Below are positions 8,151 through 27,778 of a stretch of DNA of 64,000 nucleotides, one piece after another. The DNA is from Octopus sinensis (Eukaryota): assembly GCF_006345805.1 (NCBI RefSeq), contig NC_043008.1:57226001-57290000 (forward strand), in the 5' to 3' direction. The notes under the pieces were generated by a model. It ran no database searches, had not been told where the DNA came from, and saw only the letters and a list, made by a program, of their open reading frames with translations. A program made the translations under genes and the position numbers. Every line of letters starts with the position of its first letter. Position 1 is the stretch's first letter.

Positions 8151-8177
<27 letters not shown>

Positions 8178-8178
<1 letters not shown>

Positions 8179-8472
8179 ATTCATAAATGAGGGCAAAGGA
8201 AAAAAATTCTAATGCCAAATATGCCGGAAAATTGGACATATTGTCCATTAGCCATAAAATTTTTTCACAATACGCACGCTACTCGAAAAAAGGTCGATAG
8301 AAATTTCTAAAAAATTCCATTATTACCATATCGGACCGATTTCAGAGTTAGCTACTAAGACCTTTTTTCGAGTAGCGTGCGTATTGTGAAAAAATTATAT
8401 GGTTAATGGACAATATGTCCAATTTTTCGGCATATTTGGCATTAGAATTTCCTTTGACCTGATTTATGAATT
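8178..8472. repeat. Foldback (arms 8178-8295 and 8359-8472) at the left end of the tandem array
   Basis: ~115-bp arms are reverse complements with a few mismatches, around a ~63-bp spacer; abuts (TA)n. Confidence 0.92.
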
Positions 8473-9039
8473 GTTTATAAATTTAACCGTTAAAGGTATT
8501 TTTTAATATGCTGGCCATTGATAAAATTTTTTTGGAGAAAATATTTTTTTCGAAAAGAATTTTAAGAATCTGAGGGCCTATGGAAGATTGGCTTGATTTA
8601 ATTTATCAGGTTAGTTTACCATTAAACACGCAGATGAAACGGTGCATCGTACAGAAATTACGGGTAATGTTTTTTAAATTTTCTCCTGTTTACGGAATTA
8701 ATCTTTTTTGCGGTTGAAGCTTTGGCTGTTATTTCTAGTGGGTGAATGGCCTATCATGGCCGTTCCTTGATTGTTGATGTTGAACTTAAAAATGGTCTAT
8801 GACTATTTATTTTTTCCCACTAGGCGCTGGTGGCAAAAAGAATTCTAACAAAATTTTTTCTGCCACCCTATATTGATTAATTATGAATTTTCTGGTTAAT
8901 TCCGTAATGGAATCGACGGCTTATATTTATTTGCTGCCGATAAATTTGGCGCGGAGTGCGACGATTTGAAAATTTTAGGTCAGATATTACCTTGGCAGGG
9001 TTTGAAATGCCTCGTGAAAATATCTGTTCCGACTTGGCT

Positions 9040-9144
9040 ATTTCTTGCTGAAGAATCTGAGGGCCTATGAAGATTGGCTTGATTAATTTAATCAGGTTAG
9101 TTTACCATTAAACAGCAGTATGAAACGTGCATCGTACAAGAAAT
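9040..9144 (+). ncRNA. Type I hammerhead ribozyme, array copy 1 (two indels in stems II/III)
   Basis: ATTTCTTG-CTGAAGA-ATCTG..CAGTAT-GAAAC-GTGCATC-GTA-CAAGAAAT. Confidence 0.65.
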
Positions 9145-9531
9145 TACAGGGTAATGTTTTTTAAATTTTCTCCTGTTTACGGAATTAATCTTTATTTGCG
9201 GTTGAAGCTTTGGCTGTTATTTCTAGTGGTGAATGGCCTATCATGGCCGTTCCTTGATTGTTGATGTTGAACTTAAAAATGGTCTATGACATTTAATTTT
9301 TTCCCATTTTTGAATGGGCAGGCCGCTGGTGGCAAAAAGAATTCTACAAAATTTTTTCTGCCACCCTATATTTATTAATTATGAATTCTGGTTAATTCCG
9401 TATGGAATCGACGGCTTATATTTATTTGCTGCCGATAAATTTGGCGCGAGTGCGACTTTTGAAAATTTTAGGTCAGATATTACCTTGGCAGGTTTGAAAT
9501 GCCTCGTGAAAATACTCGTTCCGACTTGGCT

Positions 9532-9639
9532 ATTTCTTGCTGAAGAATCTGAGGGCCTATGGAAGATTGGCTTGGATTTTAATTTAATCAGGTTAGTTTA
9601 CCATTAAAAGCAGATGAAACGGTGCATCGTACAAGAAAT
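9532..9639 (+). ncRNA. Type I hammerhead ribozyme, array copy 2
   Basis: Intact core CTGAAGA/GAAA/GTA; stems ATTTCTTG:CAAGAAAT, ATCTG:CAGAT, ACGG:TCGT; predicted cleavage after 9631. Confidence 0.85.
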
Positions 9640-10017
9640 TACAGGGTAAATGTTTTTTAAATTCTCCTGTTTACGGAATTAATCTTTATTTGCGGTTGAA
9701 GCTTTGGCTGTTATTTCTAGTGGGTGAATGGCCTATCATGGCCGTTCCTTGATTGTTGATGTTGACTTAAAATGGTCTATGACTATTTAATTTTTTCCCA
9801 CTAGGCCGCTGGTGGCAAAAAGAATTCTACAAAATTTTTTCTGCCACCCTATATGATTAATTATGAATTTTCTGGTTAATTCCGTAATGGAATCGACGGC
9901 TATATTTATTTGCTGCCGATAAATTTGGCGCGAGTGCGACGATTTGAAAATTTTAGGTCAGATATTACCTGGCAGGGTTTGGAAATGCCTCGTGAAAATA
10001 TCTGTTCCGACTTGGCT

Positions 10018-10122
10018 ATTTCTTGCTGAAGATCTGAGGGCCTGGGAAGATTGGCTTGATTTAATTTAATCAGGTTAGTTTACCATTAAACAGCAGATGA
10101 AACGGTGCATCGTACAAGAAAT
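10018..10122 (+). ncRNA. Type I hammerhead ribozyme, array copy 3 (one A missing at the base of stem II)
   Basis: CTGAAGATCTG instead of CTGAAGAATCTG, otherwise intact; predicted cleavage after 10114. Confidence 0.7.
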
Positions 10123-10506
10123 TACAGGGTAAATGATTTTTAAATTTTCTCCTGTTTACGGAATTAATCTTTATTTTGCGGTGAAGCTTTGGCTGTTATT
10201 TCTAGTGGGTGAATGGCCTATCATGGCCGTTCCTTGATTGTTGATGTTGAACTTAAAAATGGTCTATGACTATTTAATTTTTTCCCACTAGGCCGCTGGT
10301 GGCAAAAAGAATTCTACAAAATTTTTTCTGCCACCCTATATTGATTAATTATGAATTTTCTGGTTAATTCCGTAATGGAATCGACGGCTTATATTTATTT
10401 GCTGCCGATAAATTTGGCGCGAGTGCGACGATTTGAAAATTTTAGGTCAGATATTACCTTGGCAGGGTTTGAAATGCCTCGTGAAAATATCTGTTCCGAC
10501 TTGGCT

Positions 10507-10611
10507 ATTTCTTGCTGAAGAATCTGAGGGCCTATGGAAGATTGGCTTGATTTAATTAATCAGTTAGTTTACCATTAAACAGCAGATGAAACGGTGCATC
10601 GTACAAGAAAT
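10507..10611 (+). ncRNA. Type I hammerhead ribozyme, array copy 4
   Basis: Intact core and three stems; predicted cleavage after 10603. Confidence 0.85.
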
Positions 10612-10992
10612 TACAGGGTAAATGTTTTTTAATTTTCTCCTGTTTACGGAATTAATCTTTATTTGCGGTTGAAGCTTTGGCTGTTATTTCTAGTGGGTGA
10701 ATGGCCTATCATGGCCGTTCTTTGATTGTTGATGTTGACTTAAAAATGGTCTATGACTATTTAATTTTTTCCCACTAGGCCGCTGGTGGCAAAAAGAATT
10801 CTACAAAATTTTTTCTGCCACCCTATATTGATTAATTATGAATTTTCTGGTTAATTCCGTAATGGAATCGACGGCTTATATTTATTTGCTGCCGATAATT
10901 TGGCGCGAGTGCGACGATTTGAAAATTTTAGGTCAGATATTACCTTGGCAGGGTTTGAAATGCCTCGTGAAAATATCTGTTCCGACTTGGCT

Positions 10993-11099
10993 ATTTCTTG
11001 CTGAAGAATCTGAGGGCCTATGGAAGATTGGCTTGATTTAATTTAATCAGGTTAGTTTACCATTAAACAGCAGATGAAACGGTGCATCGTACAAGAAAT
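10993..11099 (+). ncRNA. Type I hammerhead ribozyme, array copy 5
   Basis: Intact core and three stems; predicted cleavage after 11091. Confidence 0.85.
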
Positions 11100-11486
11100 T
11101 ACAGGGTAAATGTTTTTTAAATTTTCTCTGTTTTACGGATTAATCTTTATTTGCGGTTGAAGCTTTGGCTGTTATTTCTAGTGGGTGAATGGCCTATCAT
11201 GGCCGTTCCTTGATTGTTGATTATGTTGAACTTAAAAATGGTCTATGACTATTTAATTTTTTCCCACTAGGCCGCTGGTGGCAAAAAGAATTCTACAAAA
11301 TTTTTTTCTGCCACCCTATATTGATTAATTATGAATTTTCTGGTTAATTCCGTAATGGAATCGACGGCTTATATTTATTTGCTGCCGATAAATTTGGCGC
11401 GAGTGCGACGATTTGAAAATTTTAGGTCAGATATTACCTTGGCAGGGTTTGAAATGCCTCGTGAAAATATCTGTTCCGACTTGGCT

Positions 11487-11593
11487 ATTTCTTGCTGAAG
11501 AATCTGAGGGCCTATGGAAGATTGGCTTGATTTAATTTAATCAGGTTAGTTTACCATTAAACAGCAGATGAAACGGTGCATCGTACAAGAAAT
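11487..11593 (+). ncRNA. Type I hammerhead ribozyme, array copy 6
   Basis: Stem I ATTTCTTG(11487-94):CAAGAAAT(11586-93); CTGAAGA 11495-501; stem II ATCTG(11502-06):CAGAT(11565-69); GAAA 11570-73; stem III ACGG:TCGT with TGCA loop; GTA cleavage after 11585. Confidence 0.88.
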
Positions 11594-11714
11594 TACAGGG
11601 TAAATGTTTTTTAAATTTTCTCCTGTTTACGGAATTAATCTTTATTTGCGGTTGAAGCTTTGGCTGTTATTTCTAGTGGGTGAATGGCCTATCATGGCCG
11701 TTCCTTGATTGTTG

Positions 11715-11748
<34 letters not shown>

Positions 11749-11769
11749 GTATGTATATATATAAATATA

Positions 11770-12012
11770 TAATAATAAATATTAGGGAATAAATCCAAAT
11801 TTACAGGGAAAAATCAGATTTAGGAATGAATCCAATTTTATAGTAAAATATTATATTATATTAAATTAGAGACAAAACCACTATTATGCAATCAAACAAA
11901 GAAAGACTTAAGCCAATACATAAAATAATTTATATAAATTATTTTATGTATTGGCTTAAGTCTTTCTTTGTTTGATTTGCATAATAGTGGTTTTGTCTCT
12001 AATTTAATATAT
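11770..12012. repeat. AT-rich repeat with near-perfect ~70-bp-arm palindrome (11862-12006)
   Basis: AAATTAGAGACAAAACCACTA...TAGTGGTTTTGTCTCTAATTT centred at ~11933; same family at 40311-40520. Confidence 0.88.
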
Positions 12013-12975: not shown

Positions 12976-13575
12976 TATAAAATAGTGTACATTTAAACAC
13001 AAGAGAAAACTACCCGTTAACAGGTAATTTTACACGCTAGAAGAAGCAGCCAAAACTGGCCAAAACCACAATTAATAGCAATTTTCGAAAGAAATGAAAA
13101 TAAAAACTTTTGTTATTTTTTGCGGTTATACCTAGATTTCAAATTTCTTTAGCAAATAAGATAATCTGCTGGGCGAATTCTCATCAGTAACCGGCCTTAA
13201 CAACTAACTTATAATTCAGAGACAAATAACACGTGTCTCATCATTATATGTTATAACTCTTCAAAATTCAGCGCGCAAGCGCAGTTTCAGTCGACAGTAA
13301 ATGGATAATGCCGAGCTGATTCTTCGAGAATGCTAAGATCATATTTCTAAGATAGGGTAGCGAATATTCTTAGAAATATCACCACCAGTGGCCTAGCATG
13401 TTTAAATAGTCAATAGACAGCATATTCAATATAAAATAGTGTGCATTTAAACACAAAAGAAAACTACCCTTTAACAGGTAATGTACAATATTTTATATTG
13501 AATATGTTGTCTATTGACTATTTATACATGCTAGGCCACTGGTGGCGATATTTCTAAGAATATTCGCTACCCTAT
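12976..13575 (-). mobile_element. Non-coding hammerhead-bearing element B (partial tandem of ~454-bp unit with inverted 5' end)
   Basis: Direct repeat 12976-13028 / 13430-13482; 87-bp inverted repeat 13352-13438 / 13489-13575; flanked by (TA)n; HHR inside. Confidence 0.85.
13123..13193 (-). ncRNA. Type I hammerhead ribozyme (element B)
   Basis: Minus strand: CGGTTA-CTGATGA-GAATT..(AGCAGAT:ATTTGCT hairpin)..AATTT-GAAA-TCTAGG-TA-TAACCG; 6-bp stem I, quasi-palindromic stem III ATCTAGGT, GTA site. Confidence 0.8.
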
Positions 13576-27359: not shown

Positions 27360-27778
27360 TTTTTCTTTACTACCCACAAGGGGCTAAACATAGAGGGGAC
27401 AAACAAGGACAGACAAACGGATTAAGTCGATTACATCGATCCCAGTGCGAAACTGGTACTTTATTTATCGACCCCGAAAGGATGAAAGGCAAAATCGACT
27501 TTGGCGGAATTTGAACTCAGAATGTAAAGGCAGACGAAATACCTATTTCTTTACTACCCACAAGGGGCTAAACACAGAGAGGACAAATAAGGGCAGACAA
27601 ACGGATTAAGTCGATTACATCGACCCCAGTGCAAAACTGGTACTTTATTTATCGACCCCGAAAGAATGAAAGGCAAAGTCGACCCCGGCGGAATTTGAAC
27701 TCAGAACGTAACGGCAGACGAAATACCGCTAAGCATTTCGCCAGGCGCGCTAACGTTTCTGCCAGCTCGCCGCCTTAA
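27360..27778 (-). mobile_element. Family B SINE, partial dimer
   Basis: ~190-bp 3' portion duplicated (27360-27545 / 27546-27730), then the head ending CTCGCCGCCTT. Confidence 0.9.

What the first reader, a model, noticed from the sequence alone, without database searches (positions are those of the whole stretch)
8564..11715. ~490-bp tandem array in which every unit carries a Type I hammerhead: candidate cephalopod retrozyme locus
Seen: ~6.4 head-to-tail non-coding units. Each folds by hand into a full hammerhead with 8-bp stem I (extendable past a bulge by TCTGT:ACAGG), CUGAAGA, 5-bp stem II, GAAA, 4-bp stem III with a self-complementary UGCA loop, and a GUA site. Predicted sites at 9136, 9631, 10114, 10603, 11091 and 11585 would release ~490-nt monomers. 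The unit has several other hairpins (GGTGGCA..TGCCACC, GGCC-TATCAT-GGCC, TTCC-GTAAT-GGAA). Established: tandem HHR repeats (newt satellite 2, Schistosoma SM-alpha, metazoan retrozymes) are processed to monomers that can circularise, and the ones I recall are mostly shorter than ~400 nt. Inference: this is a larger retrozyme family that I do not recognise as described from cephalopods.
Basis: partly seen in the sequence, partly recalled or inferred. Interest (0 to 1): 0.93.

Follow-up and report, generated by a model that had tools for sequence, protein, structure and literature searches.

The report
Hammerhead retrozyme array, Penelope-type insertion
A 491-bp non-coding repeat carrying a self-cleaving hammerhead ribozyme motif sits here as a 6.4-unit array; across the genome it behaves as a young mobile element inserted into (TA)n microsatellites the way Penelope-like retrotransposons insert, so it is a new family of an already known class (animal "retrozymes").

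Summary
The array is real: 8564-11716, period 487, 6.4 copies. Its units carry a complete type I hammerhead (HHR) consensus. No comparable motif arose in 20,000 shuffles of the unit. Four of the six window copies are intact; two are damaged by 1-nt indels. Rfam does not detect the motif, probably because stem II holds a 58-nt hairpin and closes with A-U rather than G-C.

The family is young (0.6% substitutions) and dispersed. The genome holds 430 exact HHR cores and about 1,216 insertion ends, each abutting (AT)n.

Arrays have variable 5' truncation and one of two fixed 3' ends, each a hairpin plus 17 nt containing TTGATT. About half form head-to-head inverted pairs, never tail-to-tail. In 27/27 pairs one arm carries a 107-nt "tail" and the other does not. 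These are published hallmarks of Penelope-like element insertion. RT + GIY-YIG elements that also end on (TA)n are abundant in this genome.

Transmitted variants avoid the HHR segment (0/20, p=0.007).

The retrozyme reading is therefore supported at the genomic level. Cleavage, circular RNA and stem covariation could not be tested. The class and this size range are already published, so this is a new member of a known kind.

The parts
8564..11716 (+). Tandem array of the 491-bp retrozyme unit. It holds a 5'-truncated first unit (consensus 404-491), six full units, and a last partial unit (consensus 1-131).
   Evidence: TRF; BLAST of the unit against the window.
9532..9639 (+). Intact type I hammerhead; predicted cleavage after A9631.
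   Evidence: Descriptor stems 8/5/4; sequence.
10507..10611 (+). Intact type I hammerhead; predicted cleavage after A10603.
   Evidence: Descriptor stems 8/5/4.
10993..11099 (+). Intact type I hammerhead identical to the family consensus; predicted cleavage after A11091.
   Evidence: Descriptor; the commonest genomic sequence.
11487..11593 (+). Intact consensus hammerhead. Stem I 11487-11494/11586-11593. CUGAAGA 11495-11501. Stem II 11502-11506/11565-11569 with a hairpin extension at 11514-11557. GAAA 11570-11573. Stem III 11573-11584. Predicted cleavage after A11585.
9040..9144 (+). Damaged hammerhead copy: an insertion in the 3' strand of stem II and a deletion in stem III.
   Evidence: Descriptor stems 8/2/3 only; sequence.
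10018..10122 (+). Damaged hammerhead copy: CTGAAGA-TCTG has lost one A at the A9/10.1 boundary.
   Evidence: Fails the descriptor; sequence.
11686..11716 (+). 3' terminal module A, which forms the end of this insertion: hairpin GGCCTATCATGGCC plus 17 nt, GTTCCTTGATTGTTGAT.
   Evidence: The same end recurs in many arrays. There are 466 exact end/(AT)n junctions genome-wide against 0 for the control. Geometry.
11277..11332 (+). Internal copy of module B: hairpin GGTGGCA..TGCCACC plus 17 nt, CTATATTGATTAATTAT. It is the alternative 3' end at other loci. The stretch between modules A and B is the 107-nt 'tail'.
   Evidence: There are 750 exact junctions genome-wide against 3 for the control.
11717..11782 (.). 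(AT)n/(ATGT)n microsatellite, the target-site flank at the 3' end of the insertion.
8153..8178 (.). (TA)13, the upstream remnant of the same microsatellite region. An unrelated 385-bp repeat (8179-8563) separates it from the array.

Best explanation
This is one insertion of a young, non-autonomous retroelement of the animal 'non-LTR retrozyme' class.

Shown here:
- The 491-bp unit carries a complete type I hammerhead consensus on the + strand.
- The family is dispersed in short arrays.
- Every copy examined abuts a (TA)n microsatellite.
- The 5' ends are variable. The 3' end is one of two fixed positions, each a hairpin followed by 17 nt that contain TTGATT and end in AT.
- About half of the loci are head-to-head twin arms. 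Exactly one arm of each pair carries the 107-nt tail.
- All units of an array, on both arms, share the same subfamily variants.
- RT + GIY-YIG Penelope-like elements that also end on (TA)n, with or without a ~40-nt tail, are abundant in the genome.

Inferred:
1. The + strand is transcribed.
2. The hammerhead cuts after GUA to give 491-nt monomers. Stem III is weak as a hairpin but is a 12-nt palindrome, so cleavage probably happens as a double hammerhead.
3. Stem I holds the two ends of the monomer together for ligation into a circle.
4. A Penelope-like RT/endonuclease nicks (TA)n and primes on the RNA at module A or module B.
5. It copies round the template for a variable distance, giving tandem units with 5' truncation.
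6. The second nick primes a second cDNA, giving the inverted arm.
For: HHR motif: all invariant positions are present and three helices form. None of 20,000 shuffles gave a motif as good. The HHR-constrained fold is -36.2 kcal/mol against an MFE of -36.6. Stem III scores -0.2 as a hairpin and -17.5 as a self-duplex. The circular monomer folds to -144.2 kcal/mol, z = -5.8, with 22 G-U pairs among 148.

Mobility:
- At least 234 BLAST matches on many chromosomes.
- 430 exact 21-mers of the HHR core, control 0.
- 466 + 750 exact terminus/(AT)n junctions, controls 0 and 3.
- 35 of 35 inspected ends abut AT-rich microsatellite sequence, mostly pure (AT)n.
- 19 of 36 clusters are '-+' and none is '+-'.
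- 13/13 fetched pairs and 14/14 pairs on contig C1 combine one A end with one B end.

These features match the PLE hallmarks in PMC8557442: partial tandems, an inverted 5'-truncated copy, a one-sided tail and (TA)n bias.

PLE presence: 4,846 GIY-YIG first-look candidates, many with open frames near 781 aa. Pfam finds RVT_1 + GIY-YIG. A CX4CX2C linker is visible in the translation. The elements end ..TTTTTTACAA|(AT)n or at a ~40-nt tail.

Selection and template:
- Variants seen in two or more units: 0 of 20 fall in the 107-nt HHR segment, where 4.4 are expected (p = 0.007).
- Singletons are not depleted there: 11 of 66, with 14.7 expected.
- Subfamily variants are fixed across all units and both arms in 28 of 30 array-by-variant cases.

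The class is documented in PMC7229834 and preprint 10.64898/2026.07.22.740005.
Against: - Rfam finds no hammerhead here, at gathering or at E<=10. It does find canonical type I HHRs elsewhere in this genome.
- The 10.1-11.1 pair is A-U, not the usual G-C. Stem II carries a 58-nt extension. Loop-loop tertiary contacts cannot be assessed.
- There is no covariation: 0 pairs change on both sides.
- No RNA data were available.
- No PLE with sequence similarity to the unit was found among 30 GIY-YIG loci and 12 HHR loci, so the partner is unidentified.
- Two arrays show mirrored, unit-specific variants and identical inner breakpoints. That fits a linear multimer or snap-back copying better than a monomer circle.
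- Most insertion arms are shorter than a unit and lack the HHR: 1,216 ends against 430 HHR cores.
Confidence: 0.75

Rival explanations
1. The family is a non-autonomous element mobilised by Penelope-like elements, but the hammerhead-like motif is a vestige inherited from a PLE terminal repeat. It no longer cleaves and plays no part in the life cycle. The templates are ordinary linear multi-unit transcripts.
For: Rfam misses the motif. The 10.1-11.1 pair is A-U and stem II is unusually long. Naiad PLEs spread without an HHR (PMC8557442). Arrays span the predicted cleavage site, so the templates were uncut or re-ligated there. Mirrored unit-specific variants and shared inner breakpoints in two arrays fit a linear multimer copied twice.
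Against: All invariant core positions and three helices are kept in a family whose transmitted variants avoid exactly this segment (0/20, p = 0.007). None of 20,000 shuffles gives such a motif. The HHR fold is isoenergetic with the MFE. Private variants fixed across all units of an array or arm are hard to obtain from a heterogeneous linear multimer: 217G is in 5/5 units on both arms, and 139A is in 2/2 units of one arm only.
Confidence: 0.17
2. It is an ordinary satellite DNA that spreads and expands by DNA-level processes such as unequal crossing-over or re-integration of extrachromosomal circles. The hammerhead-like motif is there by chance.
For: The repeat has a tandem head-to-tail structure and low GC (36.5%). 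AT microsatellites are fragile and recombinogenic.
Against: More than 1,200 ends sit at two exact positions joined to (AT)n. The 5' truncation is variable. Twin arms are strictly head-to-head with a one-sided tail: 27/27 pairs are heterotypic and none of 36 clusters is tail-to-tail. The motif is not expected by chance.
Confidence: 0.03
3. The tandem repeats are carried by a Helitron/Helentron-type or other DNA transposon that targets AT dinucleotides.
For: Insertion is into A/T-rich targets. A hairpin lies about 17 nt before the 3' end.
Against: The ends are ..TTGAT and ..TTAT, not CTRR. There is no fixed 5' end. There are two alternative 3' ends, and the twin arms are inverted with 3' ends facing outwards. 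None of this is Helitron-like.
Confidence: 0.02

Closest known systems
Metazoan non-LTR retrozymes (Cervera & de la Pena 2020, PMC7229834; Li, Clavereau & Pollet 2026 preprint 10.64898/2026.07.22.740005)
   Same: Short, dispersed tandem arrays of a non-coding, low-GC, highly self-paired unit, each unit with a type I HHR. No LTR, PBS or PPT. The host genome is rich in Penelope-like elements.
   Different: The HHR has an A-U 10.1-11.1 pair and a 58-nt stem II extension, and it is invisible to Rfam. Expression and circles are untested here. The insertion signatures are unusually explicit: a (TA)n target, two hairpin+17-nt 3' ends and a one-sided 107-nt tail. No sequence link to a PLE terminal repeat was found in the sample searched.
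Minimal type I hammerheads in terminal repeats of Penelope-like elements (Cervera & de la Pena 2014; dimeric cleavage, Lunse et al. 2017; both from memory, cited in PMC7229834 and PMC8557442)
   Same: Type I topology. Stem III is weak with a palindromic loop, which suggests double-hammerhead action. The insertion architecture is PLE-style. CUGAAGA is also the core of this genome's canonical HHRs.
   Different: This genome's canonical HHRs are 42-46 nt with a GC-rich stem II and a 2-bp stem III, and Rfam detects them. The HHR here spans 107 nt, has a 4-bp stem III, and sits in an ORF-less 491-bp unit.
Classical HHR satellites: newt satellite 2, Schistosoma SM-alpha, Dolichopoda cave-cricket pDo500 (listed in PMC7229834; the ~500-bp unit of pDo500 is from memory)
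   Same: Tandem repeats transcribed and cut into monomers by a type I HHR. pDo500 has a similar unit length.
   Different: There is no sequence relationship. Those are mostly long satellite blocks, whereas here there are hundreds of short, (TA)n-targeted insertions.
Plant LTR retrozymes (PMC4918200)
   Same: Non-autonomous, HHR-bearing elements thought to propagate through circular RNA.
   Different: Plant elements have type III HHRs inside LTRs, a PBS and PPT, high GC, and Ty3-type mobilisation. None of that is present here.

Membership tests
Hammerhead ribozyme, type I | Invariant core: C3 U4 G5 A6 N7 G8 A9, G12 A13 A14, A15.1-U16.1, and H17 not G. | tested here: met
   CUGAAGA ... GAAA ... 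GUA|C is present in the consensus and in 4 of 6 window copies.
Hammerhead ribozyme, type I | Three helices around the core, with stems II and III closed and stem I open. | tested here: met
   Stems of 8, 5 and 4 bp. None of 20,000 shuffles is as good. The constrained fold lies within 0.4 kcal/mol of the MFE.
Hammerhead ribozyme, type I | Score over the Rfam RF00163 (or clan) gathering threshold. | tested here: not met
   No HHR family matched at gathering or at E<=10. The same model finds other HHRs in this genome. The likely reason is the 58-nt stem II insertion together with the A-U closing pair.
Hammerhead ribozyme, type I | The usual G10.1-C11.1 pair, and loop/bulge tertiary contacts between helices I and II. 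| tested here: not met
   The 10.1-11.1 pair is A-U. Tertiary contacts cannot be judged from sequence.
Hammerhead ribozyme, type I | Covariation that supports the helices. | tested here: inconclusive
   0 of 40 pairs change on both sides, because the copies are about 99% alike. No copies from other species could be reached.
Hammerhead ribozyme, type I | Site-specific self-cleavage. | not testable with these tools
   Needs in vitro transcription.
Metazoan non-LTR retrozyme | Non-coding, low-GC unit in tandem, with one type I HHR per unit. | tested here: met
   Period 487-491 bp. GC is 36.5%. The longest ORF is 69 codons. There is one HHR per unit.
Metazoan non-LTR retrozyme | Dispersed in the genome as short arrays, from monomers to multimers. 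| tested here: met
   Clusters hold 1 to 11 HHR-bearing units on many chromosomes.
Metazoan non-LTR retrozyme | Expressed as monomeric linear and circular RNA. | not testable with these tools
Metazoan non-LTR retrozyme | Co-occurrence with Penelope-like elements, and sequence relation to a PLE terminal repeat. | tested here: inconclusive
   Co-occurrence is met. The unit shows no similarity to 30 PLE loci or 12 HHR loci. That is only a small sample of about 4,800 candidates.
Elements inserted by Penelope-like RT/GIY-YIG machinery | Variable 5' truncation, partial tandems, an adjacent inverted 5'-truncated copy, a tail at one end only, and a microsatellite target (PMC8557442). | tested here: met
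   Another small family in (TA)n shows the same one-sided tail, and the genome's own PLEs have tailed and untailed 3' ends.

The most novel reading that the evidence does not exclude
The family may be a genomic footprint of how Penelope-like enzymes use retrozyme RNA. Two near-duplicate internal entry modules lie 107 nt apart on one RNA, each a hairpin plus 17 nt with TTGATT. They could be engaged by the two priming events of one insertion, one per DNA strand. Copying then runs round a circular monomer, giving homogeneous tandem arms and the one-sided 'tail'. If so, the unexplained PLE tail and inverted-repeat architecture would have a concrete RNA-level cause. In addition, a hammerhead with an expanded stem II that standard models miss would point to an uncounted pool of animal retrozymes.
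Probability: 0.25. Interest if true: 0.65.

Novelty: new member of a known kind. Interest (0 to 1): 0.45.

Why it matters
Animal retrozymes and their suspected dependence on Penelope-like elements are known, but the insertion mechanism is not. This family is young and has more than 1,200 ends that can be scored at base resolution. It therefore offers an unusually clean natural dataset:
- strict (TA)n targeting;
- two defined priming sites that share one motif;
- obligatory pairing of one tailed with one untailed arm;
- homogeneity of variants within each array.

It also shows that a complete hammerhead can escape Rfam when stem II is expanded, which bears on ribozyme censuses. For the window itself the practical conclusion is modest: this is an intergenic or intronic mobile-element insertion, not a gene.

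Tried and rejected
- Rfam at gathering and at E<=10 gave no ribozyme of any class on either strand of the array.
- A covariance model (R1) built from the HHR segment found nothing in 42 PLE/HHR loci.
- BLAST of the unit against the same loci gave only chance AT-rich matches.
Array statistics therefore rest on 21 fetched arrays plus whole-genome pattern counts.
- The search for copies outside this genome found nothing. I tried viral and metagenome pattern scans, an exact look-up of the unit's 55-codon ORF and a homologue search with that ORF.
- Covariation counting was uninformative.
- The minus strand has no HHR. Its fold is weaker in energy but has a similar z-score, so strand asymmetry is only mild support.
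- The Helitron and plain-satellite readings were rejected on end structure.
- The 385-bp sequence just upstream (8179-8563) looked as if it might belong to the element. It proved to be an independent, older repeat family with complete copies elsewhere.
Full report
**The observation**

Tandem Repeats Finder reports one array at 8564-11716 with period 487, 6.4 copies, 95% matches and 4% indels. BLAST of one unit against the window splits it into:
- a 5'-truncated first unit, 8564-8651;
- six full units ending at 9136, 9631, 10114, 10603, 11091 and 11585;
- a last partial unit, 11586-11716.

The sequence reads as described:
- Stem I: ATTTCTTG pairs with CAAGAAAT.
- Core: CUGAAGA.
- Stem II: AUCUG pairs with CAGAU and encloses a 58-nt insert.
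- GAAA follows.
- Stem III: ACGG-UGCA-UCGU.
- Cleavage site: GUA|C.

**Is the motif more than chance?**

I wrote a type I hammerhead descriptor covering the core, the A15.1-U16.1 pair, H17 and three contiguous stems. I ran it on 20,000 dinucleotide-preserving shuffles of the 491-nt consensus, treated as a circle and read on both strands. None gave stems of at least 8/5/4 bp. A loose motif (>=4/3/2 bp) appeared in 24 of the 20,000 shuffles. The real minus strand has no motif.

In the window, four of the six copies pass in full. The copy ending at 9136 is weakened by indels. The copy ending at 10114 lost one A between A9 and 10.1 and fails. Copies differ mostly by 1-nt indels (0.7% of aligned columns), which looks like long-read assembly noise. 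The two defects may therefore not be real.

**Why databases miss it**

Rfam gives no hammerhead here, at gathering or at E<=10. The same RF00163 model finds canonical 42-46-nt type I hammerheads elsewhere in this genome. Those also use CUGAAGA. The motif here differs in two ways:
- The 10.1-11.1 pair is A-U.
- Stem II continues, past an internal loop, into an 18-bp hairpin with five G-U pairs.

**Folding**

| Quantity | Value |
|---|---|
| HHR-constrained fold of the 141-nt segment | -36.2 kcal/mol |
| Unconstrained MFE of the same segment | -36.6 kcal/mol |
| Stem III as a hairpin | -0.2 kcal/mol |
| Stem III as a 12-nt self-duplex | -17.5 kcal/mol |
| Whole monomer as a circle, + strand | -144.2 kcal/mol, z = -5.8, 60% paired |
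| Whole monomer as a circle, - strand | -103.4 kcal/mol, z = -4.8 |

The stem III values are the signature of hammerheads that act as dimers, so I infer a double-hammerhead mode. Stem I pairs the first and last eight nucleotides of the cleaved monomer. That arrangement suits ligation of the ends.

**What the family does in the genome**

The window lies in a 2.72-Gb assembly of 13,516 contigs. The unit has at least 234 BLAST matches at 88-100% identity on many chromosome-scale contigs. The 21-mer TTGCTGAAGAATCTGAGGGCC occurs 430 times, against 0 for the reversed control. Substitution divergence from the consensus is 0.63%, so the family is very young.

Mapping 21 arrays gave the following picture:
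- 5' ends fall anywhere in the unit.
- 3' ends fall at only two places, consensus 131 (..CCTTGATTGTTGAT) and 238 (..TATTGATTAATTAT).
- Every end abuts AT-rich microsatellite sequence, mostly pure (AT)n.
- Both ends have the same design: a hairpin followed by exactly 17 nt, with TTGATT at the same offset and a final AT.

Genome-wide there are 466 exact junctions of the first end with (AT)4 and 750 of the second. The controls gave 0 and 3. Ends therefore outnumber HHR cores about threefold, so most insertions are 5'-truncated fragments without a ribozyme.

**Twin arms**

Of 36 clusters on the three largest contigs, 19 are a minus-strand array followed by a plus-strand array. This is head-to-head, with the 3' ends facing outwards. 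None is the reverse arrangement.

In all 13 fetched pairs, and in all 14 pairs on contig C1, one arm ends at 131 and the other at 238. The 107 nt between the two ends therefore behave as a tail present on one side only.

Craig et al. (PMC8557442) list exactly these traits for Penelope-like elements: strong 5' truncation, partial tandems, an adjacent inverted 5'-truncated copy, a tail at one end only, and a (TA)n bias. They state that the mechanism is unknown.

Two further observations tie the traits to this genome:
- A different small family here shows the same one-sided tail in (TA)n.
- The genome's own abundant Penelope-like elements end on (AT)n either at ..TTTTTTACAA or about 40 nt further on. 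They number 4,846 first-look GIY-YIG candidates, many with open frames near 781 aa. They carry RVT_1 plus a C-terminal GIY-YIG domain and a CX4CX2C linker.

**Template and selection**

Subfamily variants are fixed in all units and both arms of an array in 28 of 30 array-by-variant cases. Some near-private variants fill a whole array or a whole arm:
- 217G is in 5/5 units across both arms.
- 139A is in 2/2 full units of one arm and 0/2 of the other.

This is what copying round a single monomer would give.

Two arrays argue the other way. They show a unit-specific variant mirrored in both arms and identical inner breakpoints (323/323 and 97/97). That fits a linear multimer copied twice, or snap-back synthesis. 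The form of the template is therefore not settled.

Variants seen in two or more units were transmitted through the replicating lineage. None of the 20 falls in the 107-nt hammerhead segment, where 4.4 are expected (binomial p = 0.007). Singletons are mostly post-insertion changes or errors, and they are not depleted there: 11 of 66, with 14.7 expected. This is moderate evidence that the hammerhead segment is under selection in the active lineage. Classical covariation is unavailable, because no pair changes on both sides.

**Comparison with what is known**

Short tandem repeats with type I hammerheads in animals were defined as non-LTR retrozymes and shown to give circular RNAs in a coral, a mussel and the axolotl (PMC7229834). 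A 2026 preprint links them to the terminal repeats of Penelope-like elements in Xenopus and reports consensus lengths of 51-972 bp. A 491-nt unit is therefore not unusual.

I found no paper in the searchable library that reports hammerheads or retrozymes in cephalopods. A recent octopus repeat annotation lists Penelope-like elements but mentions neither hammerheads nor retrozymes. Dfam and Repbase could not be searched.

I could not find a Penelope-like element that shares sequence with the unit, but only 30 of about 4,800 candidates were sampled.

**Verdict**

The retrozyme interpretation is supported at the level of genome architecture and motif statistics. Ribozyme activity and circular RNA remain inferences. 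This is a new family of a known kind. It has an atypical hammerhead and very clean Penelope-type insertion signatures that could help explain how such elements integrate.

Noticed in passing
window 8179-8563: A complete copy of an unrelated, older 385-bp foldback-like repeat with inverted arms of about 115 nt. It has at least 123 matches and 2,716 first-look candidates in the genome at 77-97% identity. It lies exactly between (TA)13 (8153-8178) and the start of the array. On contig C434, relatives alternate in orientation with a period of about 480-500 bp.
   Followed up: partly
L072 2685-2913; L061 2192-2386: A small family inserted in (TA)n as a head-to-head pair, with a ~90-nt tail on one arm only. 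Its perfect hairpin scores above the Rfam gathering threshold for plant MIR395 on both strands, which is a spurious call.
   Followed up: partly
L036 1337-2219: A 431-bp unit repeated twice. Each copy holds a canonical Rfam RF00163 type I hammerhead (34.3 bits) and an internal (AT)n run. This could be a second HHR-bearing element, or a pLTR, also tied to (TA)n.
   Followed up: partly
L050 2360-2400 (3' UTR of an RT+GIY-YIG element): TTGATAA-GGTTC..GAACC-GAAAC-ATGT resembles a hammerhead with C3 and G8 changed. Rfam does not detect it. It may be a decayed HHR in the genome's dominant Penelope-like family.
   Followed up: no
L043-L072 (PLE loci): The dominant Penelope-like family has two alternative 3' ends on (AT)n. 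One is ..TTTTTTACAA. The other lies about 40 nt further on, after a CTCGTATACGAG hairpin (..CTAATCTTATTATAA). This parallels the two ends of the retrozyme.
   Followed up: partly
G000 C8:42723359-42726025 and C3:105081372-105082511: Twin arms break at the same unit position (323/323 and 97/97). A unit-specific variant is mirrored in both arms of the C8 array. A simple rolling-circle model does not explain this.
   Followed up: partly
window 13129-13187 (- strand): A single-copy, AU-rich hammerhead-like descriptor hit with stems of 6/5/2 bp. There is no Rfam support, so it is probably chance.
   Followed up: partly
window 27362-27727: A 184-bp unit present twice in tandem (92% identity), resembling a SINE-like interspersed repeat.
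   Followed up: no
window 11331-11498: The unit's longest ATG ORF (55 codons) ends at the TGA inside the hammerhead's CUGAAGA. Neither the exact product nor any homologue is on record in the protein collections. It is most likely non-coding.
   Followed up: yes
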